This document shows positions 1,401 to 46,603 of a DNA stretch of 64,000 nucleotides, piece after piece (position 1 is the first letter of the stretch; each line of letters begins with the position of its first letter). The DNA comes from Haliotis rufescens (Eukaryota), in contig NW_025964112.1 in NCBI RefSeq assembly GCF_023055435.1, positions 8,804,001 to 8,868,000 on the forward strand. The letters run 5' to 3'. A model generated the notes under the pieces. The model did no database searches. It saw only the letters and a program-made list of their open reading frames with translations, and was not told the origin of the DNA. A program made the position numbers and the translations under genes.

Positions 1401-1499
1401 TTTTTCGGAACATGCGTTTAGTGTACATTGAATTGCAAAGTCGGAGAAGTTTCATATATATACTTCACGGAATGCACGAGCTAACCTTTGTTGATCATT

Positions 1500-2182: not shown

Positions 2183-2198
2183 AAAAGCGTTGGCAACC

Positions 2199-5100
2199 AT
2201 GAGGCTCTTGTTCCTGTTCGTGTTACTGCTGTTTTCGGTGGTTTCCGGTAAGTTTATTTACGTCTCTGCCTTTTGAATTGTAAAATGGTTAAATGGGATA
2301 TTCACTCCATAAACTGGAACGACGTGGTGTCATCAAGTATCATTAATCTGTTGTTACTATTCGCTAGATACTGGGTCCTGGGGGTGCTTGGAGAGCCTAT
2401 AGGATTTTGATTCTGCTGAAATAATGGATCATGCAAACACGAACACTATGATTTATGAGTGAAGTTGTAACATATATTTCTCATCTAATTTGGGGCGGTG
2501 GAGTAGCCTGGTGGTAAAAGCGTTCGCTCGTCACGCCGAAGACCCGGGTCTGATTCATCACATGGGTACAATATGTGAAGCCCATTTCTGGTGTCCCTCG
2601 CCATGATATTGCTGGAATATTGCTAAAAGCGGCGTAAAATCAAACGTACTCACTCACTCATCTTATTCGTGTTATGGCGACTGAAACTCGAACCCTACCA
2701 ATTTCTTGCGTAACCCGGCACACCCTGTACCATCGCAAAACCTGATACAAATTTGCAAATCTCTCGAGCACTAATATATCTGTTATTTCCTGTGAAAGCT
2801 AAATTTTAAATGCGAGGATGTTGATTTAGCAATTAGCGAGAACAAATTAAAAGAACTCATTGAATAATTTTCCAGGGAAGAATGGAACCTCAGATGTGAT
2901 CGATTTCTCCCAACTAGTAAACTGCAGCGATCTACAATCTATGTTGTTAATTGAACAAAAGTGTCTTGAAGAATACGGCGTCACCTTCAAAATTCCATCC
3001 TTAAGCGAAATCAACAACTCGTCCGGAGCTGCATTATTGTCTTCGATAACCCCAGGTTATTTAGATGACATGTGTAGGTTAGTATGAACAATTCCTTTAA
3101 TAACACTTTAATAACATCAACAATCATACTTCATGCTACTATTAATGATGATTGCGGCATTGGAATAGCGAAAAACAAGATCAAATGATAATGATAATTG
3201 AAATACTACCATTATGATTTTAGTGCAGTGACTGATGTTTTACGCCGCAGTCAAGGATGCCCAAGTATCAATGTATGAAGTCGAATATTGACCGGGCAAT
3301 CCGGTGACTGGCGTTTTTGATGCATGTCATCGAATCCCAATTGCTCATGCTGTAAATCAGCTTGATGGTTTAGGCTCGATTATTTATAGACTGCCACCCT
3401 AAAGCTGGAATATTGCAAATCTCAATAAAATTAGACATCCTAATAGGTTCATGTCAGAACGACATTTCATCCCATCAATCAGTTAACCAGATCGGGAAAG
3501 TGACAGTTGGAAAGTGTTTTCTGATCATGCAAACTCGAAATGGTTTATACGAGGTATTCCGAACGACAGTAAAGGGCTGTACGACTGATTCCATAAAAAG
3601 ATCGTCTTCGTCTCGCTTTAAAGGATAATAAACATTTGAAAGTGACTTTAACAGAAGAAAATTGACTATAGCCCGTAGGAAGTACTTGACAATTAATGGG
3701 ATGACCTGAGAGCTCTGTTTAGCAGTTGGTATATTGCTAAGTGTGGTGCTAAACAACAAACAAAGAAACAAAGTAGTATTTGACATTAACCCTGCTTGAA
3801 CAACAGTATGGTTGTGTTTGGGCTATGTTTCTGCAATTGCGTATTTTTTTGATTATATGATACAGAGTATATGATACATTCAACCTTTTTATAACATTGT
3901 TGCAAAATAAACGAAATGATTCTCGTTCACGTTGTCCATGTAATAACATTGTCATTTGACGAAACGTTCAGGAATCTTGACGGTTATGGGAAGGCCGCTG
4001 ATTGTGTTGGTAACATAAACAGGAAGTGTTTAAAACAGACCGATACGTCTCCGACGGCAGACAAGATAAAGAAGTGGCAAGAATATGCCTGCGCCAACAA
4101 GGACAGTGAGTATAGCGTAATTGTTAACCACTGACAAAGGAATTGGACACAATTGTCACCGGATCCTATCCGTTATGTCAGTAATAGACCATAGTAAACG
4201 CCAGAGAATAAACAGTCTTGATTATCTGCTCAAACAGATTCAATTGGTCTTAAATCACCTCTGATAATGTGACATGTATCAGTGTTACGAAGTTTCCAAC
4301 ATGAAACGCAAAGCTAATCCTAGAAATGGGTTTGTACAAGCTAAAATTGTGAAATAAGTAAATGACCAAACATGATTAATGTATTTTATTCAAAAATACA
4401 GTTTAATGTTTACAATCAAAACAGGCAGTACAATGGTCAAACAAATGGCAATAGCAATAAGTATCAGGCCTCACAATATATTTCCGAGCACTCACGAATG
4501 TCCAGAAAATTTCAGTCGAATGTCGTTAAACAATGCTGCCTCTATTTTAGAATTCAAGCTGGTTTTGGAATTCGGTAATTTTCAGATAGGTATCCCGTCT
4601 GTACTTGATAGGTAGATAAAATGCAAGACAAGTTGTAAAAGACCTCGAATCGCACTCTTGTCGCTCTTATATAGGTACAACCACCCTTTTAGAAACTGTC
4701 CAATCCTGAAACTTCTCGAATGCTCAAGACTGTCATGTTTGTCAACAACCAAAGGGGTAACTCTATGTCTTTGAAAGGCATTTAGATGTGATACACATAA
4801 GGAAAAGAATGTATGGATATCAACTTCTTTATTATTTATATATATATATATATATATATATGTACATGTAAGGACAACACAATTAAAGTCCAAAAACAAC
4901 TTGGAAAATGAAACTGTTGGTGGTTCATGAAATGTGTAATATTCTGGAATTTTTAGGGAAATATATGTTTGTCTAAGAATGTTACTCAAATTTAAAGAGT
5001 CAATTCCCTTTTATGATATGAGGGATGACTTCAACCTTTCAATAGTCACCTTTTGTTGAGCAATATTCCAGCAGCTCCAGATTTTGGTGTCTACATTTCA

Positions 5101-8100
5101 CAACTTGAGTTGTACAATCGAGCATGCTCTTTCCTTCAAAGAACGTTATGCGACCCTTGTGCAAAATTGTTTGATCAAGGTTACAACATTCAAGGCCACA
5201 TTAAAGCTTTCCAAAGCCGTCCTCTTTCCTTTCTGGTTACCATAAAAAAAAATTCTATTGTAAGCTGAGTAGATGTAAAGTTGGATTGAATTCAGGATTA
5301 GTTATCAAAACAGGATATGTTTTGAAATTTTTGAACCACGTAAGATGTGTTCGAAAGAAAAATGCTTGTCTGAAATATATTGTTTATTGATAAACCTCGA
5401 TAACTCGACCTTCATAAACTGAATAAATTGTTCAAGGGGATGTACAAGTCCCTTTGGCTCTGTGATATCAAATCACTCGAAACTACAACCAGCTCTATAT
5501 ATTTTGATTTACTCCAGTACTTCGAGAAATGAGGTTTCTCGGTGCACTAATTCATTTTATTGATGTCAATTTCCACCTTAGATGTTAAGAAACTTGCTAT
5601 CTTTTTTAACTTTACCCTAGGCATCCGTAAGAACTTATACCAGTACATAAATAAAACAGTACTGTTTTTATAATCCCCGGCTATCTAGTTGTTTAACTAT
5701 TAAGTACGTCATTGTTCCTCAAGAGCTCAACATGACCTGCATGGTCGAAGTGACGTCTAAAATGGGGGACTGTGCCGATGTCAGCAGTTACATAACCACC
5801 AATGATTACCTTCACCTCAACTTTACTGAGTTGATGCACAAGATAGATTGTTTGTGAGTAACTTGTCGTCAAATACTAGTATCCTTCTTTAAAATGATAC
5901 AACCCGTGTGCGTGAGTGCGTGTATTTATCTCATGACCACCATTCTTAGTTTTTATGGAAGTTCACAGGCAGGAAAACATTTGTGTAACTCACATCAGGC
6001 CTGATTAAAAGATTATTAGATTCTTGCTATCCTTTTTACCCCAATAGTCGTACATGGTATCATAGAAAGGCTGATTGATATCCATGAACAGGTTCTTCCG
6101 ATATTTACTTTTCCCCAAAACTACAAAACATCGAATCTTTGACATTCCATCATTAGCAACTAGAAGATATCAACCTCATTAAGTCTTTACATGAAATACA
6201 TTACATTACAATACCAAATCCGTTGAAAGTTAATTTGATGTGCCTTGTACATGAAACAGAGCTATAACCCCTCACAATCTAATCAAAATCTTAATTATAT
6301 TAAAGGTTGATTTCATTTGAATTATCTATGTCAGGTCAGCACAGATGTCGTCGCTATGTGCCCGAAAGTACATACCAGCCTGTGGCGAGGCCGCACTCCA
6401 TATGTATGAAGCAAACGTGCCAAACAACACAGACTGCTCGTCATTTGCTACAGGTTCGTCACAACAGGACTGACAGACATCCTCACACACATATGATCAG
6501 TAAAACAGCAGATGGATTAAGGAGATGTAGTTGTGTGCAAAGGCTATTAATGAACATTATATTAACTCTGTTGTGTGTTGAGTAAAGTTGTAAATAATTA
6601 AATATAGTTACTAGTATATACGATCTATAGCCCAAACGTTAAACTGTACCTGTCATACTCTTAGGGATGCTGGCGACGGAACATTATATATTCAACCTTT
6701 CTCAAAACCTAACTGTCATATCATTTTGGTGTTATTTGACTGTAAAATATTCTTATTCATTTATTGTTGCAAGAGCTTTAGATCGATGCTCATGATGTCA
6801 ATCGATGGATTATCTGTTCGAGAATCGATTATTTACAGGCCGCCATCGTATAGCTGGAATATTCTGAGTGCGGCGTTAAACAACAATCAACAAACAGACA
6901 GACAAACAAGCAATTTCTGGTATTTGCCATGTGCATACATATTTTCTGGTCGTTTCATCGAGTAGGTTTGGGAATCATTTATAAACAAGCCTTCCTGTAA
7001 ATACATGTACCATGGCATATTCCTGCGACTTGATATTAATTCATTCACTTCCGTCAGGCCCAGACATCGCCAGCGTGGACTGTTCCACCACTGAAAACAT
7101 CCGAAGCAGCTACCATCAATGCTTATTGTACAACAGTGTATTGCTAGATGTCCCGAAGCAACTAACAAGTGAAGGCACTAGCCATTACATTATGAACGCT
7201 ATGGCAATGAGTGAAAGCAAGACGATGTGCAGGTATATGTAATTTTAAGAAATCGCTTACTACCACCTCGAACTCCTCTAGTTACAAGTGTCTGTGTTCA
7301 ATATTAATATAAAACATCAAAGCCCCCAAAACCAGTCTCGAGTATCCATTGGACCAAAAGGCAAGATAGCAGTTGATGGATCACGGAAAATCAGACATCG
7401 CGGGTAAGCGATTGATCAATATTAACAGTATTACAAATTTAGACATGAGATATGTGAGAAAAGTAAAGTTCTTTTTACAAATGTGCAATCTCAACCAGGA
7501 TGACAGCGGTATTTTGACCGTTATATCTGAGGTTGCGCTGCTTCTCTGGCGTCTGTTATCTATCGCCGTCTTCGACATTATCAATAAACATTTTCTTGAT
7601 GTTGCTTCAATTGTCGCATGGTTATCCATCCGTAAAGAAGCGGGATTTCATATGCGTACAGAAAATAGCGCTTCTTCCCGAGGCAAGAGAGTTAACTGAC
7701 TATAAAAGTACAGTTTCCAGTCCAGCCAGTTAACTCTCTTGAATCGGGAAGATGAAAATAGCGCGGCATAGATCTTAAAGTCTCCAAAATATATTTCTCC
7801 ATTTTCAGGGTTCCTTTTTAAATTACTTATATAGAAAAACATATATCTTTATCTTTTATCAACCAGTAACATTATTTGTCAATTGTATGTAATTACAAAG
7901 CTTTAAGCATTGTATTATTCGAATGTACATCTAATTCATGCTTCGGAAATACTTATTTTGAGAACTTTTAAAATCATTTTGCTTCCATTTACTATCTTCC
8001 GAATTTTCTTATGTAGAACTGATGCAAGCATTTTAGAAATTTTAAAAATGTATTACCAAACAAGCAGGTGAGCTACGTTTTAATGAGACGATACTGATAC

Positions 8101-11012
8101 TATTGAACATTTTTACACCAGGCACAGTTGACCGATATGAAATGGTTTTCAAAAAGGGCACTTTAAAGGGAACGTGAACCTATTTCAGAAGCAAGTATCC
8201 CAGCATGAATTATAGAATGACTAAATAGTACGTGTTACATATACAGAATATACATAAACATACAGCGTGCTTCATAAGTTACGTTCTATGTCGTACAGTA
8301 ATCTGAAGAACTACCAGCTGACAGTGAACTGTGTGTAACATACACAGAATATACATAAACATACAGCGTGCTTCATAAGTTACGTTCTATATCATACAGT
8401 AATCTGAAGAACTACCAGCTGGCAGTGAACTGTGTGTAACATACACAGAATATACATAAACATACAGCGTGCTTCATAAGTTACGTTCTATATCATACAG
8501 TAATCTGAAGAACTACCAGCTGGCAGTGAACTGTGTGTGACATACACAGAATATACATAAACATACAGCGTGCTTCATAAGTTACGTTCTATATCATACA
8601 GTAATCTGAAAAACTACCAGCTGGCAGTGAACTGTGTGTAACATACACAGAATATACATAAACATACAGCGTGCTTCATAAGTTACGTTCTATATCATAC
8701 AGTAATCTGAAGAACTACCAGCTTACAGTGAACTGTGTGTAACATACACAGAATATACATAAACATACAGCGTGCTTCATAAGTTACGTTCTATATCATA
8801 CAGTAATCTGAAGAACTACCAGCTTACAGTGAACTGTGTGTAACATACACAGAATATACATAAACATACAGCGTGCTTCATAAGTTACGTTCTATATCAT
8901 ACAGTAATCTGAAGAACTACCAGCTGGCAGTGAACTGTACTCTGTGGGTACAGGAGCAGTGCAGTGACCACGTGACAAAGCCGATGGTGGCCGACTCCAA
9001 GACAGTGCAGGACGGCTTGGCTAAACTCTGCGGCCACATCCAGGGTAAGATATACGTCAAAATGTCCATCCGTTATTTATACGTGTATGTCTTTGTTGAG
9101 ACTCGAGACGCACACAACATTCAAGTTCCATAATTATACGTGTGTAGAGGTTGGCATTTTAATTTTTTTTTAAACCCGGTGAGATTTGAAAGTCATTTTT
9201 AAAGTATACAGTGCATGGATACAATATATTTATTTTATTTCAAACTAGTATATACTAATTTAAATCCGGGATATAGAGTCATACATGTCTTCGATTTTTA
9301 GACGTGTTGAAGGTGGAATTTTTAAAACGGCGATATTTAAATTTAAAAAGGAAGAACTATGTATAATTTAGAAAAGGCATTCTTTTTTATTTAATTCAAA
9401 GTTGTATGGTATTTTTATTTAAGAATGATATAGTGAATCTTTCTTATAATTGTCTGTTCCTAGATTTCGACACTCAGTGCGTACAGAATGCACCTAAAGC
9501 AGTTTGCGGCAGTGGCCATGGACTCCAAGCTTTGGATTCAACTAGCCCAAGACACCTTTGCGCGTAAGTAAATTTCATCAGAGATCTTTCGGTTCAAAGA
9601 CACCATGACGGTCTGAAGAATGCTTAGTACCTTATTAAATATTTCTATGTTAGATCAATGGTGTATTCACGTGGATAATTGGTAAAGAAGTTGCATGCAT
9701 GTATTGAGCTGCAAACAATATAGCAGGCTCTACCGTGTTTACAACCCACGGTGTCACTGGTAGTCCAAAAGGATATCACAGTATGACTGAACGCAACTTT
9801 AATCAGGCTGAACTCAGTAATATTCCATCTAGATGCATTAACCGGGGACCTATCAATAGTCGTGGTCAGTCAGACCAGTGGTTGATAGCATGAATAAAAA
9901 TCCACGCCTGGATTGCATGATGACGCACAATCACTCAGGTGACACACTGTAACCACCAGATGTTCATTAAGTTTCTGACACCCATAGTATATATTGTAGC
10001 AAAACAAATAAAAGCGACAAAACCCTATGTATAACCAAACGAATTCTCTATTCAAAGTAATGACAATTGTGATATGGTTATGAATAACTAGTGATGATGA
10101 CAGTTGTTCCCGATGTGATCGTATTTGTTTCACCAATGTCACCCGTCACAAACACGTGCAATGGAAAGTCAATGGTTGAGCTGAATTTGTTTCGGAAATG
10201 TGTTCCACAAGTCTATCAAACACATTTTAAAAGCTTTACTAAGGTTTCAATGTTGCAACCCCGATGGAACAACTTATGTGCATGAGTCGTATGAAGATTT
10301 ATTGAATCTTCGAACGAAAGCGTTAGACCAGCTTTTGTGAAACGTGTACTAAGGTTAAAACAAGGCGTGTGTTCCCTTTCCGCGAAAACCTTGTGTCATC
10401 TCTCTATCAATGGTTGAGCTGAATTGCTTTGGAAATGTCTTCCACAAGTCTATCATAAACATTTTAAAAGCTTTACATAGGCCTTGAATGTTGTTACCCT
10501 AATGTGCAGGAGTATGAACCTTTATTCAATCTTCAAACGAAGGAGATGGACCGGCTTCTGTAAAACGTGTACTAACGGTAAAACAGGACATGTGTTCCCT
10601 TTACGCGGAGACCTTTTGTTCCCTTTACGCGGACACCTTGTGTCATCTCTGACTCAGTATGATAATTTCAAATAAGTTTCACTTTTTGCCTTTTGCGCTT
10701 TATGGAATATGTCCGTAATCCAGACTGGTTATTACCTGGTATTAACGTTTTCTTATTCACCATGCTTTAAATAAGTGTCAAGAGTTTTCAGATTCCTTGC
10801 GCCTTTTTTATATATGATATTTCTACTCAGGATTGTACATGGTAACTCTGGAAGTGTTTTTGCTTGTTTTCAGTGCCACTAGTGCCACCCGGAAGTGTCT
10901 GGTGTCGGCAGTGAGTGGCTGCAGCAAGACGACTGTCAGCATGTACGAAGACCTCCTGCGTAGCCAATCCCCGTCTATGTGTCTGACCGCTGGGTCAGTC
11001 GTAATTGGCTGA
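2199..11012 (+). CDS. Gene A1: secreted Cys-rich protein, 395 aa, signal peptide + two 12-Cys domains (uncharacterised family)
   Basis: Nine phase-consistent GT-AG exons: 2199-2247, 2876-3077, 3972-4105, 5724-5853, 6335-6453, 7058-7232, 8905-9044, 9464-9563, 10874-11012 (1188 nt, no internal stop). Starts MRLLFLFVLLLFSVVSG (signal peptide), ends ...SPSMCLTAGSVVIG*. Exons 2-9 each have 3 Cys; several N-x-S/T sequons. Frame is preserved in the A2 copy. ATTAAA at 11053-11058. Confidence 0.85.
2491..2660 (+). mobile_element. tRNA-derived SINE with (ACTC)n tail (copies ~17689-17857, 38497-38572, 45325-45408, 51292-51450 -, 51467-51585, 62070-62200 -)
   Basis: A-box TAGCCTGGTGG, degenerate B-box, body GATATTGCTGGAATATTGCTAAAAGCGGCGTAAAA, ACTC tail; dispersed copies. 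Confidence 0.85.
5005..5230 (+). mobile_element. Penelope-like RT C-terminal remnant (related pieces at ~10000-10650 -, ~47900-48290 +, ~58425-58865 +)
   Basis: YDMRDDFNLSIV...SNIPAAPDFGVYISQLELYNRACS resembles the YDKRDDF...SNIP..PAYGVYISQL.RY.RACS motif. Confidence 0.65.
8233..8938 (+). repeat. 101-bp tandem repeat, 7 units, spanning the intron 6 / exon 7 boundary of A1
   Basis: Acceptor ACAG|TAATCTG recurs with exon starts at 8299, 8400, 8501, 8602, 8703, 8804, 8905. Confidence 0.95.
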
Positions 11013-11709
11013 TGTAGATTGTCAGTTACAGCTTCACGTAGCTTAAACGGAGATTAAATATGTTCCAATATCTACATCGAAGTTGTTTTAAGTTTTGTTA
11101 TTCCTGTATTTTCCTGGTTTGTCCAGGTATTTTGCAATGCTAACCTATGTTATTGACAGTGTATTTAGAAGTGTAATATTTTTCATACATGACCTTCTGA
11201 GGATAAAAATCAGGAAAGTACCCGAGAGTTATATATTATAAATAATTATTGGCTGTCGTTTGATTTAGGATAACCACAGAACAAGAATTCAGTCTCTGAT
11301 CGGGTTCTGTGCTAGCTGATAACACAAACAAATATTAATATGAGGGTTGTAAATAAAGCGACAGAACCCTTTCCATATCCAATATAAATCTCTGTATAAA
11401 GCAAAGTCGATTATACAATTCCGATTATATCATGAGCATGTGTTTATAAATCACTATAAAATAGTAATCACACCAGGTTCCGCGAAAAGGTGAGCATATC
11501 CTGCCCCACCGGGGGCACCCGTCACAAACACATGCAAAGGCAACTCAATTTGTAAGTTCGATCTGAATGTATTATGACGTCACAGCTCGAAAATGCCGTG
11601 AAAGCCCCTTGACACGTTGTCAAATTTGTATGTGTTGAGTTTGTAACGTATTTTAAGAAACTAAAAGAAAATAGTACAAAAGAAAGTCCACATTCAGATT
11701 GTTCGGGTT

Positions 11710-13804: not shown

Positions 13805-14870
13805 CTGTGGTCATAGGTCGCAAGGAATAATTATTCAAATGATTACAAATGTAACCTTCACAAATATCGACAAAACGCCGCGATTTTGCTTCATCTATCC
13901 CGAGAAGGGGGTGCCTAAGTGTCCTATCCCTAAATATCACTATGATGTTTTACATAAGGCAGTTTATGCATTTCATATTGTTTTCTCTGTAAACCTCAGA
14001 TTTCTTTTGATTTCATTTGTGAAACGGCTCATAATTGTTTGAAAGACTCATGAATGATGCAGATTATTTGTGACGCACAAAAGGAAAAGAACATGCATGT
14101 CTAGACATTATCTTGACTTTACCACAAAATGTTGAAATCGTACGCGCTGATTGTGTAACATTTCTTGAACTCTCTTATCAAAGTGGTCCAACACCTTTGC
14201 ACAACTTCCAGGAGCGATGAGATATTTCGATGATAACGAAAAAACAGTCCGTACTTATCTTTGTTTTCGTGTGTATGTAGTTAATTACATATGCCTATCT
14301 TGTGAATTGCGGGGTGTTGTTTCAGACTACGACACATCACGCTGCCGGTAATTCTTACTTCACGATAAGTGATAAGGAAACAGAGCACACACGCAAAGAT
14401 TACCATCTGTCAGTTCTAACAGTTCTACTCGCAACCTCGTCAGTGCTGCAAGGTTAAGCATTTGGTTTTCGAACATCCAACATTTACTTTATATTCCGTA
14501 TTTTAATACTGGACCTAAGTTCGGAACCAACAGGTACATTATGTAAGGAACACATAAGTAAAATACTAATGATACAATGTGCAATCAGTAGAAACAATAT
14601 GACAATTGTAACCTCACCTTCCTTTCGCAAAGAGAAATGCTGGTTCCACAGCCCCGTTTGATTATATGCTTTCAACGAATGATGTCTTGCTCTTTCCACG
14701 CAGCTTTGGACAGTGTTTTATGCCATATCACATAAATTTGTGAGGAAAGCACAAAGTGATGCAGATCCTAGACGTTTACTATTTCTGTAAAACCGGATAT
14801 AGTTTTGAGACAATCAGATACAGAACACAGCTCTTGATCAGGAGATTCTTGGATTCGAACCCATGATCCA

Positions 14871-16616: not shown

Positions 16617-17403
16617 TGTAAATGGCATTTGAAACTTTTTCGGAACATGCGTTTAGTGTACATTGAATTGCAAAGTCGGAGAAAATTCATATATAATTCG
16701 TTGATCATTGATATACCTGAAGCTAAAGTTAAATTCGGAGGAGAAATTCCGATTCATGTGCGTAAAGAAACAAATCCGCAAGAAGGGGGGCACAATCGGT
16801 GCCCGTGGAGATGCCTACTTCTTGCCTAAAATGTCTTACCCCCACATTTTACATAGATTTCATCAATGATGATGTCCACCTTTTCACATATTGTTTTCTC
16901 AGTAAACTTCAGATGACATTTGCTGTCATTTTTGACAAATTGTGCTGACCTCAAAGATAGATATGCAATTCTATCAATGGTCACCATGTTTTGTAACAAA
17001 ACCCCTATGGATCAAGGAATGAAGTTTTCCTAAGTTTTGACAGAATTGAACTTGATTCTTATCTGAGATTGTAAAAAGTCAAGCAAATCCTTTGAGTTTT
17101 AGAGAATCCACATTAATAATTCCACTTCCTTATTGTATGAAGGATAATGGTTAATCTTCAAGACAGGAATTTGGTGGTACATTTGCTGTACCCAGAGATA
17201 TATCTCTCTTTGTACAGAAACAAATGTTTCTAGTTCAACGCACACTGTCTTGCACAATACCTTTTATCTATTTTGAGAGTATGCCATGATTGTATTCAGG
17301 CAGATGTTACAGGCGACACGGATTCCCACGTGGGTGTGTATCAAGCCCTGCATATAATATAAGTGCAGGGAAACGTGTATGTTCATTATAAGCGCTGGCA
17401 ACC

Positions 17404-28250: not shown

Positions 28251-28303
<53 letters not shown>

Positions 28304-37300: not shown

Positions 37301-40300
37301 TTGCAAATACTGAAAAATGAGTTTTGTGATTTCTTTTGTTCCTGCCATATTTTTTTATGTTTGTATTCCCGTTTCAATAAAAGGATTGCAAACTCTGCAT
37401 TTAAAACGAGTTACTACAATCTGGGGAACACGATAACAGCATTAAAGCAACTCCCGATGAAGGGTGTACGAGTTTTATGCCGAACACACAGGTACAACAA
37501 TGCGGTTGTAATTAGCTTTGTGAAAAACATCCTTTGTTCAACTAAGGTAATATTAAACTGCGTGATCGACATACATATGTGACGCCATTCTATAACTGTT
37601 TAAACGATCCATTACCTTTCAGGAATAGAAAGTTGTTTGTCAATTAGTCATGTCTTCATTATCTTGAACACTAATTTCAATTTACGTACATTTGAAATTG
37701 ACGAAACTATTTTTTTTGACACAAATATAAAGTGAATGATTTCAAATGTCGCTTGCAGGGCTGGACGTGCATCGTATGATTTGACACAGGTTAAATAGGA
37801 TAGAATGAACGTATTAACATTTTTTAATATATGTCAAATCCTGAAAAATATTAAATAATATGTATAAATCTCTGCTACATTATGTTATTTGTAGAGATAT
37901 TCATACTAAATTATTTAGATAACCCTTTCACTAGAAAGACTTAAAACAGTAGAAACGTATGTATCCTTGTCTAGGGCTCTATACTATAAGCGAGGGAGCT
38001 TGGCGTATGTGTAGTAATGGGCAGTCAACTCCATCAACACAGCCAATCACAGGTAGGCTCAGAATTATTCGGTCACCACCCGTACGTACTCCATAACACA
38101 AGGTGATTTAAAGGGCAAAAAGTCAAACTGAGCAAAGTGTTTGAAATAAGGGAAAATCAATGTTTTGGTTCATTCCTGTTACATTTTAGAGATTGACATT
38201 TCACATACCAGCGTCATTGTCTCACTAAGTATGTACGTGACATTTCTTTATTCAGGGGTAGTATTATGCTTGTTTATGTTGTGACGTCAATAGGATGTCA
38301 AAAAGCAAACAAATGATATCAATAAACCAATACAATGTGGACAGATAAAAGTCTCTGACTGGTCAGTAGCGTGGCAATGTCAAGTCTTTGCACTTTGTAT
38401 GGGATGGACTGATCAAATACCTATCATAATGGCTGATGAAAACATCAGTCTCGAAACCGAAACATTCCGTAGGTCGAAAAGAGCAAAGCAGTGATTTCTG
38501 GTGTTCTCCGGAGTGATATTGCTTGAATATTGCTAAAAGCGGCGTAAAAACCTTACTCACTCACTCACTCACTACGGCTACAAAACTAATTCAGACACTA
38601 ATTCTAATGCAGCTCACATGAACTTTAACTGAATGATATATGCAATATCAATACGAATATAACAAGAAGTGTACGTTTTCATGTGGAAACATGGACATAG
38701 ATAGATGAAGCAAATTCTTCAGTAATGCTCACACCAAATCTAGTAATACCTCCATGGCGATTCCGCGTCAGAATAACCCAGAATGTTCCTCATGCTCGAG
38801 TTGACTAAAGGGGATTCGGTGGTACCCAGAAGGAGACGTTGCTGATGATGTTTGTTTGTTTGTTGTTTAACGGTCTGTAAAATAATCGAGTCCGGACCAG
38901 ACAATCCAGTGATTGACATCATGAACATTGATCCTCACAATTAGGATCGATGACATGTATCAACCAAGTCAGCGAGCCTGACCACCTGATCCCGTTCGCT
39001 CAAGCATAGTCGCCTTCCACGGTAAGTATGGGTTGCTGAAGACCTATTTTACCCCGGAATCTTCACGAGTCTGTTCATGATGTCAGCCACTGGTTTGTCT
39101 GTGGCAGACTGTTGTGATTATTGCTTACTACGACTAAAAAAATAAATAAAAAAGTCAAGCTATGAACATGTACTTACTTTCAACAATGGAGCAAGTAGCT
39201 GCCAGTCCCATACGTGTCTCGTTCTGCGTTGGCACAGTCTTTATAAAGGAGCCACCAAACCGGCACTTGTAGATGACGGCATACAGGCAGGTAGTAGCCT
39301 TGAGAGTAGCATCTGTAGAACTGGGAAATAAACATGATGTAGACACTGCAGTATCCTGCCAGACCATGTCTATGTAGATACTTACACCATTATGTACATG
39401 TGTATGTGTACTCCATCTTGATAACGGTGTAAGAATCTTCATCCCTTAATGCAAAAAAAAAGATTTGTTATCATTCGGACTACAACTTGTTTTGGAAGAC
39501 AGTTACCCTCTTCTTCTCGTTGAATACGACTGAAATGAAAGGCTCTGATTGGATACCAGGCCGTCAGGGTAGATCAAGTTACTGAACATGACCAGTGATG
39601 CATGAAGTCACTTCTTTCGACGAACATAGTTTGTTTGGGACCAATTCTAACCAGGAATCCCCAGAGGAGCGATAAAAAGTATACTCACTCACTCACTCAC
39701 ATTACTCAGAGAGGTAGCTTCCCTAAGACAGTTTGATATGTTTACATCTTAGTTACTAAATTATAGCACTTTTAATGCATCTGGTGGACACACTTTCAGC
39801 CTTTAAGTGAAAAACAACATAAGATGTATTTGTTATATTCCGAAAGAACATTTGTAATTTAGTGTTTATGTGTATTGAGGATGGTATGTAAGGATGTAAC
39901 TATTTATTTGTTATCTTTTCGGCTTAAACACAAATTCGGAAACGACAGAATCCAGTATTTAAGTGATGTTTACTTGTAACAGAATATGAACTGGGGATTA
40001 CTGTTGTTCTTATTATTGTACTGGCTCCTATCACCGATAATTGAATCAGTTATTGAAAATATGGTACATGGAATGCTTAGTTGACTGTATTGTTTAGTAG
40101 CAAATAAGTGTTGTGTACGTGATATATTCAAGGTGAAGAAAATAATGTCAAATGTTTGTTATCAAATTGAACATACAGTGAAACTGTCTCAACTTAAGGT
40201 GAGGTGAAATGGGGTTAAACGACGCTTCAAGACTGTTGCATAGATANNNNNNNNNNNNNNNNNNNNNNNNNNNNNNNNNNNNNNNNNNNNNNNNNNNNNN

Positions 40301-43300
40301 NNNNNNNNNNNNNNNNNNNNNNNNNNNNNNNNNNNNNNNNNNNNNNNNNNNNNNNNNNNNNNNNNNNNNNNNNNNNNNNNNNNNNNNNNNNNNNNNNNNA
40401 CTTATGCCAGTTTTATATCGCTACCCCAGTGAGATACCATGCGGCAGGTTTAACGTGGATACTCCACGCAGACACAGTATACTGACCCCGAGCCGAGTCC
40501 TTGTTTTAACCCCATGATGCCAAGCGCCAGACAGGGTAACAACAAATACCATCGTTTAACGTCCTTTGGTACGACGCGACCGGGGATCGAACCCCCCACT
40601 TCCTCCCCCGGGGAGACATTCTATCCACTCGACCGTGGAGGCGTTATATTCAAGATAACAAGGGCATATATTAATACAAACGCGTTGTTTTTTGGTGACG
40701 GGTGAAATACACCAGTTTGACATCTTGCAATCCGACCTTCCTACATAACCCCGTAACCTAACGCGTCAAATGTCGGTTGACCAGGTTTCACAACATATCA
40801 AAGGCTCATACGCTGGTGATCTGTTTAAGAAGATGGTTGAACATTTTCTACAAACCTGCACATTGTTTTACTGTCCTTTTGTATCAGTAAGTTAACATAG
40901 TCCATGACGATATCAGCCGAAGCGGCACCAGAAAGACTCGCGGCGTCAGAGAGTTGCTCCTGTACACTGTTGAGGTTCATACACTGCTGGCTTAACTGAG
41001 CGATGGTTGTCCCCACTGTGTTTAGTGTACAGGTAGCTGTGACCTCGACAGCGTGATTGTCCCCACCAGTGATACCTGAAACACCGGTGTCAGCTAGCAG
41101 AGGAAAACTTGGACAAAGATCGACTGCGAAGACCAGTTGAAAAGACAGTGTTGACAGGTAAAGAGGATCAGTTGTGATGAGAGTGTAGCTAGACAGAGGA
41201 CCAATTGTGTGGAGAGTGTAGACAGACAGAGGACCAGTTGAGGGAAGAGTGTAGACAGACAGAGGTCCAATTGTGTGGATAGTGTAGACACGCAGATGGG
41301 ACCGGTTGTGAGGAGAGTGTAGACCGACAAAAAGATCAGTTGTGAGGAGAGTGTAGACAGGCAGAGGATCAGTTGTGAGGAGAGTGTAGACAGACGAAGA
41401 GAATAGGTTGTGAGGAGAGTGTAGACAGACAGAGGACCAGTTAAGGGAAAAGAGTAGACCGACAAAAAGATTAGTTGTGAAGAGAGTGTAGACAGACAGA
41501 GGACCAGTTGTGAGGAGAGTGAAGACAGACAGAGGACCGCTTGTGAGGACAGCGTAGACCGACAGAGGACCACTTGTGAGGAGTGTGTAGACAGACAGAG
41601 GACCAGTTGAGAGGAGTTTGTAGACAGACAAAGAGAATCGGTTGAGAGGCGAGTGTAGACAGACAGATGGGGTCAGTTGTGAGGAGTGTGTAGACAGACA
41701 AAGAGGATCGGTTGAGAGAAGTGTACACAGTCAAAGAGGATCAGTTGAGCGGAGTTTGTAGACAGGTAGAGGACCAATTGAGAGGAGTTTGTAGACAGAT
41801 AAAGAACATCAGTTGAGAGGAGAGTGTAGACAGACAGATGGGGTCAGTTGTGAGGAGTGTGTAGACAGACAAAGAGGATCAGATGAGAGGAGAGAGTAGA
41901 CAGGCAGAGGACAAGTTGAGAGGAGTTTGTAGACAGGCAGAGGACCAGTTGTGAGGAGAGTGTAGACAGGCAGAGGATCAGTTGTGAGGAGAGTGTAGAC
42001 AGGGAAAGAGGATCAGTTTTGAGGAGAGTGTACACAGTCAAAGAGGATCAGGTGAGAGGAGAGTGTACACAGCCAAAGAGGATCAGTTGTGAGGAGAGTG
42101 TAGACAGGAAAAGAGGATCAGTTTTGAGGAGAGTGTACACAGTCAAAGAGGATCAGTTGTGAGGAGAGTGTACACAGTCAAAGAGGATCAGTTGAGAGGA
42201 GAGTGTAGACAGTCAAAGAGGATCAGTTGAGAGGAGAGTGTACACAGACAAAGAGGATCAGTTGTGAAGAGAGTGTAGACAGGCAAAGAGGATCAGTTGT
42301 GAGGAGAGTGTACACAGTCAAAGAGGATCAGTTGTGAGGAGAGTGTACACAGTCAAAGAGGATCAGTTGAGAGGAGAGTGTAGACAGTCAAAGAGGATCA
42401 GTTGAGAGGAGAGTGTACACAGTCAAAGAGGATCAGTTGAGTGGAGAATGTAGAAAGGCAGAGGACAAGTTGAGAGGAGTTTGTAGACCGGCAGAGGACC
42501 AGTTGTGAGGAGAGAGTGGACAGGCAGAGGATCAGTTGTGTGGAGAGTGTAGACAGTCAAAGAGGATCAGGTGAGAGGAGAGTGTACACAGCCAAAGAGG
42601 ATCAGTTGTGAGGAGAGTGTACACAGTCAAAGAGGATCAGGTGAGAGGAGAGTGTAGACAGCCAAAGAGGATCAGTTGTGAGGAGAGTGTAGACAGGCAA
42701 AGAGGATCAGTTTTGAGGAGAGTGTACACAGTAAAAGAGGATCAGGTGAGAGGAGAGTGTACACAGCCAAAGAGGATCAGTTGTGAGGAGAGTAGACAGA
42801 CGGAGGACCAGTTGTGAGGAGTGTGTACACAGACAAAGAGGATCAGTTGTGAGGAGAGTGTAGACAGGCAAGGAGGATCAGTTGAGAGGAGAGTGTACAC
42901 AGTCAAAGAGGATCAGTTGTGAGGAGAGTGTAGACAGGCAAAGAGGATCAGTTTTGAGGAGAGTGTACACAGTCAAAGAGGATCAGTTGTGAGGAGAGTG
43001 TACACAGTCAAAGAGGATCAGTTGAGAGGAGAGTGTAGACAGTCAAAGAGGATCAGTTGAGAGGAGAGTGTACACAGACAAAGAGGATCAGTTGTGAAGA
43101 GAGTGTAGACAGGCAAAGAGGATCAGTTGTGAGGAGAGTGTACACAGTCAAAGAGGATCAGTTGTGAGGAGAGTGTACACAGTCAAAGAGGATCAGTTGA
43201 GAGGAGAGTGTAGACAGTCAAAGAGGATCAGTTGAGAGGAGAGTGTACACAGTCAAAGAGGATCAGTTGAGTGGAGAATGTAGAAAGGCAGAGGACAAGT

Positions 43301-46300
43301 TGAGAGGAGTTTGTAGACCGGCAGAGGACCAGTTGTGAGGAGAGAGTGGACAGGCAGAGGATCAGTTGTGTGGAGAGTGTAGACAGTCAAAGAGGATCAG
43401 GTGAGAGGAGAGTGTACACAGCCAAAGAGGATCAGTTGTGAGGAGAGTGTACACAGTCAAAGAGGATCAGGTGAGAGGAGAGTGTACACAGCCAAAGAGG
43501 ATCAGTTGTGAGGAGAGTGTAGACAGGCAAAGAGGATCAGTTTTGAGGAGAGTGTACACAGTAAAAGAGGATCAGGTGAGAGGAGAGTGTACACAGCCAA
43601 AGAGGATCAGTTGTGAGGAGAGTAGACAGACGGAGGACCAGTTGTGAGGAGTGTGTACACAGACAAAGAGGATCAGTTGTGAGGAGAGTGTAGACAGGCA
43701 AGGAGGATCAGTTGAGAGGAGAGTGTACACAGTCAAAGAGGATCAGTTGTGAGGAGAGTGTAGACAGGCAAAGAGGATCAGTTGTGAGGAGAGTGTAGAC
43801 AGACAGAGGACGCCAGTTTAGAGGAGAGAGTAGACAGGCAGAGGACAAGTTGAGAGGAGTTTGTAGACAGGCAGAGGACAAGTTGAGGGGGAAGCGTAGA
43901 CAGGCAGAGGACCAGTTGTGAGGAGAATGTAGACAGGCAAAGAGGATCAGTTGTGAGGAGAGTGTAGACAGGCAAAGACCATCGGTTGAGAGGAGAGTGT
44001 AGACAGACAGATGGAGTCAGTTTTGAGGAGTGTGTAGACAGTCAAAGAGGATCAGTTGAGAGGAGAGTGTAGACAGTCAAAGAGGATCAGTTGAGAGGAG
44101 AGTGTACACAGTCAAAGAGGATCAGCTGTGAGGAGAGTGTACACAGTCAAAGAGGATCAGTTGTGAGGAGAGTGTAGACAGGCAAGGAGGATCAGTTGAG
44201 AGGAGAGTGTACACAGTCAAAGAGGATCAGTTGTGAGGAGAGTGTAGACAGGCAAAGAGGATCAGTTGTGAGGAGAGTGTACACAGTCAAAGAGGATCAG
44301 TTGTGAAGAGAGTGTACACAGTCAAAGAGGATCAGTTGTGAGGAGAGTGTACACAGTCAAAGAGAATCAGTTGTGAAGAGAGTGTACACAGTCAAAGAGG
44401 ATCAGTTGTGAGGAGAGTGTAGACAGACAAAGAGAATAGGTTGTGAGGAGAGTGTAGACAGACAGAGGACCAGTTGTGAGGAGAGTGTAGACAGACTAAG
44501 AGAATAGGTTGTGAGGAGAGTGTAGACAGACAGAGGACCAGTTGTGAGGAGAGTGTAGACAGACAAAGAGGATCAGTTGAGAGGAGTTTGTAGACAGGTA
44601 GAAGAAAAGTTGAGAGGAGTTTGTAGACAGACAGAAGACTAGTTGTGATGAGTGTGTAGACAGACAGAGGATCAGTTGTGAGGAGAGTGTAGACAGGCAA
44701 AGAGGATGTCAATAATTGAGTTGTGTGGAGAGTGTAGACAGACACGGAGATCAATTGAGAGTAGAGTGTAGACAGACAAAGAGGATGAGTTGTGAGGAGA
44801 GAGTAGATAGACAAAGAGGATCAGTTGAGAGGACAACGAAACAGATTGAGAGGACGAGTTGAGATGAAAACGTAGATAGACTAAGAAGACCAGCTGAGAG
44901 GAGGATGTAGCCAATGTACGCAATAGAAGAACGGATATAGACTAGGAGAACCAGCTTAGATGAATATATAGATACAATAAGAGGATAAGTTGAGATAGAC
45001 TAAGAGGACGAGTAGAGAAGAGGACGTAAATTGCCTAAGAGGACGAGGGGACCAGCTGGGAGGAAGATATAGATATGCCAATAGATAGAGGACCAGTTGA
45101 GAGGAGAACGGACATATACTAAGAGGGCCATTTGAAAGAAGGACGCATATAGACTCAGAGAACAAGCTGATAGAAGGTATACTTTAAGTTAACAAGTTGA
45201 GGGGAAGGCCAATACAGAAACGGCTGGGGGAACGTGACAACGATGACCAGTTGAGAGGATGGCGTCTATACCATAAGAAACAGAGGATGCACAATAATTT
45301 GAGATACTACACTAATATGATCTGAAGCTCATTTCTGGTGTCCCCCGCCGTGATATTGCTGGAATATTGCTAAAAGCGGTGTAAAACCATATTCACTCAC
45401 TCACTCACTAATATGATCAGTTAAGAAGATTTCGGAGCAGACTCAGGGCAGGACGAAGAAGGATGAAGAAGTCCAGTTGAGATGAGAACCTTGGTAGACA
45501 CAGTTTAGAGGACATACACTGTATATACATATATGCTGAGAGAACAGCAGAGAGGAATACTTATATACCATACTACTCAAAATAAGTTAAGGAACACCCA
45601 ATTATTTCGCATTACAAAAGTTATTCAATCCTGACATTGTAATAGTAACTATAGTAATATGATACAATCGAGTGTTCTCTAACTTCTTTTGAGTAGCGTG
45701 TAATGAAGAAAGACCACCTAAAGAAGGACGAGAAAATGTCAAAGGTTGCCGGTGGAGATAGATTATTATGTAGAAATGATTATTTATGACAGATACACAA
45801 TGGAACATTGTCACTTGCATTGGTACCTAAAAAAATATATATTCAAGGAAATATGTAGAGGATTGCATCAAGAAATCAAGACGTACATGTAGGCGTGGCA
45901 CGGGGAGCTAGCTTATGTTCAAATACAATGAGACCGACATGCTGCGGATGCATACTCACTTGCGATGGCATCACAGGACTGTGTCATCTGTTGCTGAAAG
46001 TCGCTTTCTGCTGGATAAATACTGTTGTCTTGAGCAGACACACTGTTGCATTTCTTGTTGACATAGTAGAGGCAGGCCACAGCTTTCGTGTAATTTTCCT
46101 GATTACTGTTTGAAACAAGATCTAATTTCGCACCTTTCTCAAGCACCAATCTACTAATCCATTAAGCTCTAGGGCCTAGCCCAAATAGTAATGAACCAGG
46201 CTTTGAAATTAAAATAGCCTTAGACCTTGTCATGATAAAAGTATAGACAATGAGAAATATGATTTCTATATAAAACTGCACAATTTTTACTTTAAAAATA

Positions 46301-46603
46301 TAGATATTTATTTTTATATAATTGCCTAAAACGTGATATATGCATATATCCCTGTTGTTTATTAATTTCATAAATTGCATATACTTTCATACCTGCACAA
46401 AGTGTCACTCTCATCTACTATGAAGTTTTCGATGATCAGCAGTGCATCTTCGGGTGTGGCTTCAGCAAGGGTGGGAGGGGACGGTATTTGTATTGGAATA
46501 TTGTACACGTCCAGACACGCCTGGTTCACCGTCTCGACTGATTTGTTGGAACATGTTACCTGTGACAGCAGCTCAACCACAACGCTGTCTTGGCCTGTGA
46601 TCC
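26023..46603 (-). CDS. Gene B2: multi-module Cys-rich paralog of A with C-terminal hydrophobic (GPI-like) tail, >=648 aa, 5' exon not securely identified
   Basis: Phase-consistent exons in transcript order: 46603-46393, 46105-45960, 41075-40856, 39320-39178, 35165-34955, 32426-32284, 30696-30597, 29423-29308, 28724-28529, 28158-28016, 27130-27043, 26251-26023. Each has 3 Cys and aligns by eye to A exons (VDCSTTKGIQDGALDCLLYH vs VDCSTTENIRSSYHQCLLYN; LCGDAAVRIYE vs ACGEAALHMYE). Ends KSRAGKRVASMLMTVLAFIYSRVGVSQG*. Joining the four most upstream exons into the same transcript is inferred from phase compatibility only. Confidence 0.72.
28211..28303 (+). repeat. (CA)n microsatellite, present only in duplication copy 2
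   Basis: Direct reading; absent at the homologous position ~13390. Confidence 0.9.
29121..29304. other. Assembly gap (others at 30253-30387 and 40247-40399)
   Basis: Runs of N; all fall in introns of the B2 model. Confidence 1.
31530..32180 (+). mobile_element. Tc1/mariner transposase remnant
   Basis: RVTSRQQDNHIRLVH, WPAVSPDLS and terminal NANGGHARY* motifs; degenerate. Confidence 0.75.
32890..33210 (-). mobile_element. Tc1/mariner transposase C-terminal remnant (second family)
   Basis: LPWPSRYPYLNPIEHL*DELDRCVRQ...GHTRY* on the minus strand. Confidence 0.75.
34700..34935 (+). mobile_element. SINE with Meta/MESC-like core and (AAAC)n tail (copies ~6770-6910, 12008-12150, 36568-36805 -, 38850-39070 -, 54595-54865 -, 61660-61905 -)
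   Basis: Shared GTAAGAGGCGAC-like core and TCGATTATTTACAGACCGCC...GCTGGAATATTGCTGAGTGCGGCGTTAAAC 3' region in many copies. Confidence 0.75.
41130..45300 (+). repeat. Purine-rich 33-35-bp minisatellite (~4.2 kb) with an 830-bp higher-order duplication
   Basis: Unit GAGGAGAGTGTA(G/C)ACAGTCAAAGAGGATCAGTTGT. Variant markers recur at 42441/43271 and 42791/43621. Edges degenerate. Confidence 0.95.

What the first reader, a model, noticed from the sequence alone, without database searches (positions are those of the whole stretch)
2199..46603. Candidate uncharacterised recognition system: tail-to-tail secreted and membrane-anchored paralogs of a six-Cys module family
Seen: a signal-peptide protein (A, 4 modules, no anchor) faces a homologous larger protein (B, 6 modules) that ends in a Thr/Pro-rich spacer plus a hydrophobic tail. 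Their stop codons are ~700 bp apart, A has been duplicated, and A's N-terminal domain is hypervariable. Established: linked soluble and anchored paralogs with one fast-evolving domain are typical of immune, allorecognition and gamete-recognition loci, and abalone sperm lysin/sp18 are known cases where exons outpace introns. Inference: this is a ligand/decoy plus receptor, or effector plus self-protection, cassette. I do not recognise the family. The C-x(8-11)-C-x7-C spacing recalls helical disulfide-rich DUF19-like domains, but this is untested.
Basis: partly seen in the sequence, partly recalled or inferred. Interest (0 to 1): 0.9.

Follow-up and report, generated by a model that had tools for sequence, protein, structure and literature searches.

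The report
Fast-evolving abalone six-cysteine gene cluster
A red-abalone locus encodes an uncharacterised family, found only in abalone, of helical disulfide-rich secreted and surface-tethered proteins. The secreted gene sits in at least four tandem copies whose front half changes amino acids faster than its own introns, which is typical of a recognition or arms-race molecule, but its target is unknown.

Summary
The window is Haliotis rufescens, C334:8.804-8.868 Mb.

- **Gene A (+ strand):** 9 exons, 391 aa. It has a signal peptide, four six-Cys modules and no anchor.
- **Gene B (- strand):** it converges on A, with stop codons 698 bp apart. I read B as one 13-exon, 664-aa, six-module gene ending in a short Thr/Pro stretch and a hydrophobic, GPI-like tail. 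NCBI splits it into two loci and omits two exons.
- **Assembly gaps:** all three N gaps lie in B introns.
- **Copy number:** A is not merely duplicated. Four intact copies lie in a 15-21 kb tandem array, and an older paralog lies upstream. Each unit also copied B's last four exons, and two of the three fragments are broken.
- **Selection:** A exons 2-5 diverge 8.6-14.5% in four of six copy pairs, against 2.8-5.6% for introns. dN/dS is 1-3, against 0.4-0.7 in exons 6-9.
- **Family:** it has 7 genes in this genome and is seen only in Haliotis. It has no Pfam match and no PDB fold match. Only a language-model resemblance links it to DUF19/DUF1397/CPG4.

The parts
1..15560 (.). Tandem unit 0 of the array (A1 plus a 3' fragment of B plus a LINE remnant).
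   Evidence: Self-BLAST matches 1-14198 to 15561-29120 at 93-98% identity. Two further units lie upstream at window coordinates -36000..-21016 and -21012..0, with no gaps.
2199..11012 (+). Gene A1: 9 exons, 391 aa, intact. Exons: 2199-2247, 2876-3077, 3984-4105, 5724-5853, 6335-6453, 7058-7232, 8905-9044, 9464-9563, 10874-11012 (the last includes the stop).
   Evidence: Exons were mapped from the exact A2 model through a 4-copy alignment. The ORF is intact.
2876..6453 (+). Variable half of A1 (exons 2-5, modules 1-2).
   Evidence: A1 vs A2: exons 49/573 differences against introns 127/3811 (p=1e-7), with 45 non-synonymous against 4 synonymous changes and dN/dS 3.05.
11710..13805 (-). B' fragment in unit 0: copies of B exons 10-13 with no upstream exons. 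NCBI LOC125372397 is a partial model of it.
   Evidence: tblastn of P0003 and P0011. The four exons are intact here, but the equivalent fragments in units -1 and -2 carry a frameshift plus a 72-nt deletion and a 78-nt deletion.
14779..15402 (-). LINE-type endonuclease remnant at the unit junction.
   Evidence: Pfam Exo_endo_phos, E=7e-8. The same junction sequence recurs in units -2 and -1.
15561..29120 (.). Tandem unit +1. It ends at the assembly gap.
17404..25324 (+). Gene A2 (NCBI LOC124135834). Exons: 17404-17452, 18097-18298, 19190-19311, 20684-20813, 21291-21409, 22040-22214, 23357-23496, 23911-24010, 25186-25324 (the last includes the stop).
   Evidence: The spliced translation reproduces P0002 exactly.
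20684..20813 (+). A2 exon 4, the most diverged exon.
   Evidence: 21-24 of 130 nt differ from the other copies, against 2-5% in flanking introns, and the boundary is sharp. The genome holds no closer donor sequence.
26023..49127 (-). Gene B as a single 13-exon model. Exons: 49079-49127, 46393-46603, 45960-46105, 40856-41075, 39178-39320, 34955-35165, 32284-32426, 30597-30696, 29308-29423, 28529-28724, 28016-28158, 27043-27130, 26026-26251, with the stop at 26023-26025.
   Evidence: Exons 1-6 correspond to P0001 and exons 9-13 to P0003, by exact mapping. Exons 7 and 8 and the joins are. The total is 1992 nt, 664 aa and 36 Cys, in frame.
34949..34954 (-). Consensus GTGAGT donor that the NCBI model P0001 reads through as 'Q-stop'.
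   Evidence: It sits 2 nt after the Cys codon, where every other t1 exon splices.
32284..32426 (-). B exon 7 (t2 of module 3). It is in neither NCBI model.
   Evidence: 143 nt, with a polypyrimidine-AG acceptor, a GTAAGA donor, the C-x7-C...C pattern and the right phase.
30597..30696 (-). B exon 8 (t1 of module 4). It is in neither NCBI model.
   Evidence: 100 nt, the same length as A exon 8, with an AG acceptor, a GTAAGT donor and three Cys.
26026..26142 (-). B C-terminal tail: a short Thr/Pro stretch, basic residues and a hydrophobic stretch (candidate GPI signal).
   Evidence: 39 residues follow the last Cys, with a Kyte-Doolittle maximum of 2.3. The paralog G has a classical-looking tail.
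29121..29304 (.). Assembly gap in B intron 9. It is also where the homology of unit +1 ends.
30253..30387 (.). Assembly gap in B intron 8.
40247..40399 (.). Assembly gap in B intron 4.

Best explanation
Shown: this is a real gene cluster in red abalone, not an artefact. It encodes a small family of extracellular, all-helical glycoproteins seen only in Haliotis. The proteins are built from two-exon six-Cys modules. The family comes in a tethered form and a soluble form. The tethered form is the single-copy gene G at 6.13 Mb and the six-module gene B, both with a hydrophobic, GPI-like C-terminus. The soluble form is gene A, which has no anchor. A 15-21 kb segment carrying A and the last four exons of the convergent B was duplicated in tandem at least three times. 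All four A copies stayed intact, while the B pieces are decaying. Modules 1-2 of A are under diversifying selection among copies and modules 3-4 are conserved. Inferred, the mechanism I think most likely: A proteins are secreted binding/recognition proteins. A variable face on modules 1-2 contacts a diverse or fast-changing partner, such as a microbe, a gamete or conspecific surface, or another host protein. The constant modules 3-4 give a common scaffold or docking function. B and G present the same fold on the cell surface. Whether A acts on B or G as ligand, decoy or competitor is open.
For: Gene models: three NCBI proteins map exactly to the window with GT-AG introns. All modules share one exon plan. 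t1 exons run from phase 1 to phase 2 and end 2 nt after the third Cys. t2 exons run from phase 2 to phase 1. All 24 Cys are invariant in 11 homologs from four Haliotis species. hhalign links module 1 to module 3 at 92.8% probability. AlphaFold2 gives an all-helical model with pLDDT 67.6. A carries 8 N-glycosylation sequons and B carries 9. Array: four units at 89-98% identity, the upstream ones without gaps. Four intact 391-aa ORFs. B' fragments carry disabling deletions in 2 of 3. Selection: exons 2-5 exceed introns (p=1e-7 to 1e-12 for pairs with A2). dN/dS is 1.0-3.05 there, against 0.4-0.7 in exons 6-9, which are less diverged than introns. No donor exists for A2 exon 4 elsewhere in the genome. 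The A ortholog in H. cracherodii is only 84% identical, against 95% for the 3' half of B. Tails: hydrophobic ends in B and G, none in A. Family size: all genome matches fall at 8.754-8.851 Mb and 6.131-6.140 Mb of one chromosome.
Against: No partner is known and the complex prediction gave no answer. Part of the exon excess is mosaic ancestry rather than pure positive selection. In copy Am1, intron 2 and the synonymous sites of exon 3 are also elevated, and A2 exon 4 has pS of about 0.13. Only four paralogs were compared, so no site-model test was run. B as a single gene is my inference, since NCBI annotates two loci. Its annotated first exon gives a weak signal peptide (Kyte-Doolittle 1.6). 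GPI anchoring was judged by eye only. The structure models have moderate to low confidence (pLDDT 67.6 and 58.6).
Confidence: 0.6

Rival explanations
1. A and B are a co-evolving pair, in which soluble A is the ligand or decoy of the tethered receptor B (or an effector with its self-protection partner), kept together by tight convergent linkage.
For: The genes are paralogous and converge, with stops 698 bp apart. One is soluble and one tethered. A evolves fast. Both genes are present on the same chromosome-scale contig in H. cracherodii.
Against: There is no binding evidence, as complex prediction gave no answer. Each duplication copied only B's 3' end, and those pieces decay, so new A copies do not need their own B. 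The sequenced 3' half of B is conserved (95% to H. cracherodii), not co-diversifying. Adjacency of paralogs is what tandem duplication produces anyway.
Confidence: 0.15
2. The family consists of carrier or binding proteins for small hydrophobic ligands (lipids, pheromones, sterols), like other helical six-Cys haemolymph and odorant-binding proteins. Variation in A would then tune ligand range.
For: The proteins are all-helical, disulfide-locked and secreted. Language-model look-alikes include the insect 27 kDa haemolymph protein family DUF1397, and two members give faint DUF1397 HMM hits at E=1.9.
Against: No HMM or fold match to OBP/PBP or DUF1397 passes any threshold. Small-ligand carriers rarely show dN/dS above 1 over two whole modules. 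GPI-tethered multi-module relatives fit surface recognition better.
Confidence: 0.12
3. They are structural extracellular-matrix components (egg envelope, mucus, shell or cuticle-like matrix), comparable to nematode CPG-4, and copy number serves dosage.
For: CPG4-domain clusters appear among the look-alikes at 0.84-0.86. The proteins are multi-module and glycosylated. The next gene on the minus strand is a Calx-beta/EGF/ZP-like matrix-type protein.
Against: Scores under 0.9 are leads only. Dosage amplification predicts homogenised copies, not non-synonymous excess. There are no low-complexity or repeat regions typical of matrix proteins.
Confidence: 0.08
4. It is an artefact. The 'duplicates' are uncollapsed haplotypes or mis-scaffolded contigs, and the B model joins unrelated pieces across gaps.
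For: Unit +1 ends exactly at gap 29121. B spans three gaps. NCBI does not join the two halves of B.
Against: Units -2, -1 and 0 and the start of +1 are contiguous without any N. Intron divergence of 3-5% with exon-specific excess is not allelic. The same unit junction recurs three times. H. cracherodii has a cluster of 5 A-like proteins at 90% identity or more, and the same exon 9-10 join in B. Phases and module order fit across all the joins.
Confidence: 0.04

Closest known systems
DUF19 / T20D4.11-like domain (Pfam PF01579), with DUF1397 (PF07165, insect 27 kDa haemolymph protein) and CPG4 (PF15481)
   Same: These are secreted, Cys-rich, helical extracellular domains of unknown function that occur in clustered, lineage-expanded gene families. 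C. elegans has more than 80 DUF19 paralogs, many in clusters, with no RNAi phenotype (PMC8410859). They are the nearest protein-language-model look-alikes of both P0004 and P0002 (0.89-0.91, 183-190 of 256 features).
   Different: No Pfam HMM match for any of 11 family members or for the locus. The architecture is four or six two-exon modules. The family was seen only in Haliotis. A profile-profile comparison could not be run, because no DUF19 sequences were obtainable here.
Abalone sperm lysin and sp18 (acrosomal fertilisation proteins)
   Same: Same genus. They are secreted helical proteins that have been duplicated, with non-synonymous change outpacing introns (my knowledge: Metz, Robles-Sikisaka and Vacquier 1998). 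Duplication of this family is treated in PMC9022041 (listed, not read).
   Different: As far as I recall, lysin and sp18 lack the disulfide framework. Here 24 Cys are invariant. There is no sequence relation, and no evidence that A is expressed in gonad.
GFR-alpha / GAS1 (GDNF-receptor type) proteins
   Same: This is a working analogy only. They are several all-helical, disulfide-rich domains in a row on a GPI anchor, with soluble forms alongside the tethered ones.
   Different: There was no Pfam GDNF hit and no GFR-alpha structure among the fold matches. The Cys count per domain differs (10 versus 6).
Insect odorant/pheromone-binding proteins (six-Cys helical)
   Same: They have six conserved Cys in a small helical domain, are secreted and form expanded families.
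   Different: The Cys spacing differs. There is no HMM hit. The only trace is AtraPBP1 at Foldseek rank 25 with E=2.0, which is noise.

Membership tests
DUF19 (PF01579) | Match to the Pfam HMM at or above the gathering score (23.2 bits). | tested here: not met
   No hit at E<=1 for P0001-P0004 or at E<=10 for 11 members. A six-frame scan of the whole genome gives 4 weak hits, none at this locus. The best of them is a low-complexity repeat.
DUF19 (PF01579) | Resemblance to family members in sequence-derived features. | tested here: inconclusive
   ESM Atlas gives DUF19 clusters as top hits at 0.89-0.91 with 183-190 shared features. However, only 3-5 of the ten best named hits share a family or clan, which the tool flags as weak.
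DUF19 (PF01579) | Profile-profile homology (HHpred or hhalign against the family alignment). | not testable with these tools
   No DUF19 sequences or alignment could be fetched.
DUF1397 (PF07165) | Match to the Pfam HMM at or above 25.7 bits. | tested here: not met
   Only 2 of 11 members match, with best E=1.9. The genome scan finds nothing at the locus.
CPG4 (PF15481) | Match to the Pfam HMM. | tested here: not met
   It is not among the hits at E<=10. Only look-alike scores of 0.84-0.86 were found.
GPI-anchored surface protein (B and G) | An N-terminal signal peptide, plus a C-terminal small-residue site, polar spacer and terminal hydrophobic stretch. | tested here: inconclusive
   G orthologs have a clear signal (Kyte-Doolittle 2.4-3.1) and a tail with a small-residue run, about 6 polar residues and a 13-residue hydrophobic end (Kyte-Doolittle 2.9-3.1). 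The B tail is weaker (Kyte-Doolittle 2.3, followed by 8 mixed residues), and its annotated N-terminus is weak (1.6). No GPI or signal predictor was available.
Secreted protein (A) | A cleavable N-terminal signal and no membrane segment. | tested here: met
   A 10-residue Leu/Phe core (Kyte-Doolittle 3.4) is followed by small residues. Only 9 residues follow the last Cys. Judged by hydropathy, not by SignalP.
Known fold in the PDB | A significant structural match of a module. | tested here: not met
   Foldseek's best E is 1.1 and 0.3. VIA-align's best Z is 6.3 and 5.2, all generic helical bundles. The PDB sequence profile search gives a best E of 0.64. Model confidence is moderate, so this does not prove that the fold is new.
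Diversifying-selection locus (lysin-like pattern) | Exon divergence above intron divergence, and dN/dS above 1, in a defined part of the protein. | tested here: met
   Caveats are mosaic tracts and only four sequences.

The most novel reading that the evidence does not exclude
A, B and G form a self-contained extracellular recognition system specific to abalone. Diversified soluble A proteins would bind, or compete for, the tethered paralogs B and G (or a shared partner) in gamete, larval-settlement or immune recognition. That would make it a new protein family playing a lysin/VERL-like or allorecognition-like game.
Probability: 0.12. Interest if true: 0.8.

Novelty: new variant of a known kind. 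Interest (0 to 1): 0.5.

Why it matters
Abalone are the textbook system for rapidly evolving fertilisation proteins. A second, unrelated family with the same signature would be a ready-made system for studying how recognition molecules diversify. That signature is secretion, duplication, and exons that outrun introns. Here it comes with tethered paralogs next door. The work also corrects the public annotation. Two 'uncharacterised' loci plus two missed exons appear to be one six-module gene. The 'duplicate' is in fact a four-unit array that preserves only the secreted gene. The family has no Pfam model and no structural relative, so a solved structure or an HHpred link to DUF19, DUF1397 or CPG4 would give those large families of unknown function a tractable member under visible selection. 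Without expression or binding data its biological role remains open, and tandem arrays with hypervariable exons seem frequent in this genome.

Tried and rejected
No RNA evidence could be gathered and read laying was not used.
The H. cracherodii, H. rubra and H. asinina loci could not be fetched to test whether the A/B pairing is conserved.
- **Complex prediction** (two pieces of B against A2) returned 'no answer' with score 0.00. This is evidence neither for nor against binding.
- **Pfam scans** of four proteins and of 11 family members gave nothing usable.
- **Genome scans** with the DUF19 and DUF1397 HMMs found nothing at the locus. The best DUF19 hit elsewhere (L022) is a low-complexity repeat unrelated to the family.
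- **PDB searches** by sequence profile, Foldseek and VIA-align on two models gave only generic helical bundles.
- **HMMER search** of 1.84 billion cluster representatives with a t1-exon profile found only Haliotis proteins plus three repeat-protein false positives. Word-indexed searches with two proteins and with the family profile found only Haliotis.
- **hhalign** did not link the short modules (2 and 4) to the long ones or to each other. Their kinship rests on the Cys pattern and on exon phase.
- **Literature searches** for the LOC and XP identifiers found no paper.
- **Haplotig artefact** was considered and rejected, for the reasons given under the artefact rival.
- **Gene conversion** from an existing paralog as the source of A2 exon 4 was rejected, because no closer copy exists in the genome.
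- **The 35-bp satellite** in B (41147-44833) was considered as a Thr/Pro-rich coding spacer and rejected. Its period is not a multiple of 3 and it lies in intron 3.
- **The joined 13-exon B protein** was assembled only inside scripts, for the frame check and a tree. Those tools used the NCBI pieces P0001 and P0003.
Full report
**Origin and layout**

The window is Haliotis rufescens, contig C334:8804001-8868000 of a 1.33 Gb assembly. Self-comparison shows that 1-14198 matches 15561-29120 at 93-98% identity. I fetched 60 kb upstream. Two more units of the same 15-21 kb repeat lie there, at window coordinates -36000..-21016 and -21012..0, at 89-98% identity and without any N. The same junction, which includes a LINE-type endonuclease remnant (Pfam Exo_endo_phos, E=7e-8), recurs between units. 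So this is a genuine four-unit tandem array. It is not a single duplication and it is not an uncollapsed haplotype.

**Gene models**

Six-frame clustering and exon-level HMMs showed two alternating exon types. Type t1 has the pattern C-x12-C-x~35-C. Type t2 has the pattern C-x7-C-x~20-C. An HMMER scan of 1.84 billion cluster representatives with a t1 profile returned four Haliotis proteins and only spurious repeat proteins besides. Three of the four are NCBI models of this very locus:

| Protein | NCBI locus | Size | Identity here |
|---|---|---|---|
| P0002 | LOC124135834 | 391 aa | gene A, copy A2 |
| P0001 | LOC124135900 | 327 aa | 5' part of B |
| P0003 | LOC124135886 | 256 aa | 3' part of B |

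All three map exactly to the window with GT-AG introns.

Gene A has 9 exons: a 49-nt signal-peptide exon followed by four modules of two exons each. Every t1 exon starts in phase 1 and ends in phase 2, two nucleotides after its third Cys codon. Every t2 exon runs from phase 2 to phase 1. Each module is therefore a symmetric 1-1 unit. This shared exon plan is the best evidence that all modules are homologous. hhalign links only the long modules 1 and 3 (92.8% probability, E=4e-7), not the short modules 2 and 4.

**B as one gene, and the assembly gaps**

P0001 ends in 'Q-stop'. That stop is the read-through of a consensus GTGAGT donor, placed exactly where all other t1 exons splice. P0003 begins in the middle of a module and has no signal peptide. 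Between the two lie a perfect 143-nt t2 exon (32284-32426) and a 100-nt t1 exon (30597-30696). Both have strong acceptors, GTAAG-type donors and the right phases.

Joining all 13 exons gives 1992 nt and 664 aa, with 36 Cys, six modules and no stop.

The three gaps lie in introns 4, 8 and 9, so no frame depends on their length. The donor of exon 9 has only 3 nt read before gap 29121-29304 begins. Support for continuity differs from gap to gap:

- P0001 spans gap 40247-40399.
- P0003 spans gap 29121-29304. Its 95%-identical H. cracherodii ortholog P0012, from an independent assembly, shows the same exon 9-10 join.
- The join across 30253-30387 rests only on my model.

One caveat remains. Homology of unit +1 stops exactly at gap 29121. 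I therefore cannot exclude that further units are hidden there.

I did not send the joined B protein to any search or fold tool. It was used only in scripts.

**Ends of the proteins**

A has a strong signal peptide (Kyte-Doolittle 3.4) and nine residues after the last Cys, so it has no anchor. B ends with about ten residues rich in Thr/Pro, then basic residues and a 13-residue hydrophobic stretch (Kyte-Doolittle 2.3). A third family member, G, lies at C334:6.131-6.140 Mb. Its orthologs are P0004, P0008 and P0009. G has four modules and a textbook-looking GPI-type tail (Kyte-Doolittle 2.9-3.1).

B's annotated first exon gives only a weak hydrophobic core. Another 49-nt candidate first exon at 51938-51986 has a better core, a GTGAGA donor and the same split Gly codon as A.

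The stop codons of A2 and B are 698 bp apart. A has AATAAA signals 40 and 340 nt after its stop. B has no canonical signal in the spacer.

**Evolution of the array**

All four A copies keep intact 391-aa ORFs. The co-duplicated B pieces (exons 10-13) have fared worse. One is intact. One has a frameshift and a 72-nt deletion in the last exon. One has a 78-nt deletion that removes a donor. Selection has therefore kept A, not the cassette.

| Comparison | A exons 2-5 (modules 1-2) | A exons 6-9 (modules 3-4) |
|---|---|---|
| Exon divergence between copies | 8.0-14.5% in five of six pairs | lower than introns |
| Intron divergence | 2.8-5.6% | - |
| dN/dS | 1.0-3.05 | 0.4-0.7 |

The excess in exons 2-5 is significant, with Fisher p=1e-7 to 1e-12 for pairs that include A2. 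In the sixth pair, Am2 and A1, exons 2-5 differ by only 1.7%, below their introns (2.6%). For A1 against A2 there are 45 non-synonymous and 4 synonymous changes (p=0.025).

The divergence of A2 exon 4 is 14-16% in 50-nt windows, against 2-4% in the flanks. It stops at the exon borders. No closer donor for it exists in the genome.

The picture is not pure positive selection. In copy Am1, intron 2 (about 10%) and the synonymous sites of exon 3 are also raised. A2 exon 4 has pS of about 0.13. Some tracts are therefore older or were imported.

A tree places the four copies as a species-level clade, sister to H. cracherodii P0013 (support 97/97). The upstream paralog A0 (P0014, at -49620..-41583) is orthologous to genes in H. 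rubra and H. asinina. The B core sits on a very long branch. A differs by 16% from its H. cracherodii ortholog, and the 3' half of B by 5%.

**What the family is**

- Whole-genome scans with the t1 profile and with the full-length profile hit only the 8.754-8.851 Mb cluster and the G locus.
- Database searches found the family only in four Haliotis species, always named 'uncharacterized protein'. The index-based searches are of limited sensitivity.
- There is no Pfam family, no PDB sequence relative and no paper naming these loci.
- AlphaFold2 gives all-helical models with pLDDT 67.6 for A2 and 58.6 for the 3' half of B. Foldseek and VIA-align find only generic helical bundles, with best E of 0.3-1.1 and best Z of 6.3.

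The one positive lead comes from protein-language-model look-alikes. For both P0004 and P0002 the nearest clusters are nematode DUF19/T20D4.11-like, arthropod DUF1397 (27 kDa haemolymph protein) and CPG4, at 0.84-0.91. However, the Pfam HMMs do not match the proteins or the locus, and the tool's own consistency measure is borderline. DUF19 is itself a large, clustered family of unknown function (PMC8410859). I file the Haliotis family as a possible distant relative, not as a member.

**Mechanism**

Shown: the family consists of secreted and tethered paralogs built on a disulfide-locked helical module. Only the secreted gene was amplified and preserved. Diversification is confined to its N-terminal two modules.

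Inferred: A is a secreted binding protein with a variable recognition face and a constant scaffold. B and G display the fold on the cell surface.

The complex prediction gave no answer. The decay of the B fragments shows that the duplicated unit is not a matched pair.

First-stage notes from elsewhere in this genome report other tandem arrays with hypervariable exons (unchecked). This tempers how unusual the pattern is here.

**Verdict**

The family is new to the databases as a characterised entity, but the phenomenon is a familiar kind. I score interest at 0.5.

Noticed in passing
window 8232-8938 and 23088-23390: A 101-bp minisatellite has 7 copies in A1 and 3 in A2 (96-97% matches). Each copy repeats the end of intron 6, the splice acceptor and the first ~36 nt of exon 7, so every copy offers a potential acceptor.
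   Followed up: partly
window 41147-44833: A 35-bp satellite with 107 copies sits in B intron 3. It has extreme GC skew (up to +0.56) and AT skew. All three frames are partly open, but the period is not a multiple of 3.
   Followed up: partly
window 47120-47849: A 46-bp tandem repeat with about 16 copies lies in B intron 1.
   Followed up: no
window 51938-51986 (-): This is a candidate alternative first exon of B. It is 49 nt long, like the signal exons of A and of the NCBI B model. It has a better hydrophobic core, a GTGAGA donor and a split Gly codon as in A.
   Followed up: partly
window 57650-64000 (-) and L021 1-8400 (contig 8868001-8876400): The neighbouring minus-strand gene has exons for Calx-beta-like repeats, an EGF-like module (62907-63113), a weak ZP/cuticlin N-terminal match (62303-62554, CUT_N E=0.003, below cut-off) and a hydrophobic segment (57754-57924). 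It looks like a large matrix or surface protein unrelated to the family.
   Followed up: partly
window 14779-15402 (-): An endonuclease (Exo_endo_phos) ORF from a LINE sits at the junction between array units and recurs at the other junctions. It may have seeded the unequal crossing-over.
   Followed up: partly
window 19176-19189 (+): NCBI isoform X1 of A2 (P0010, 395 aa) uses an acceptor 12 nt upstream of exon 3. This adds four residues between the third and fourth Cys of module 1. The H. cracherodii ortholog has the long form.
   Followed up: no
window 6900-6960, 21780-21870, 34800-34900, 36600-36750, 38850-38930, 51620-51700, 54560-54700, 61650-61760: A short interspersed repeat is scattered on both strands through the introns and spacers. 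It is recognisable by a conserved translated motif in one frame.
   Followed up: no
window 25325-26022: The 698-bp spacer between the convergent stops has two AATAAA signals for A but no canonical signal for B. The 3' UTR of B may therefore overlap that of A.
   Followed up: no
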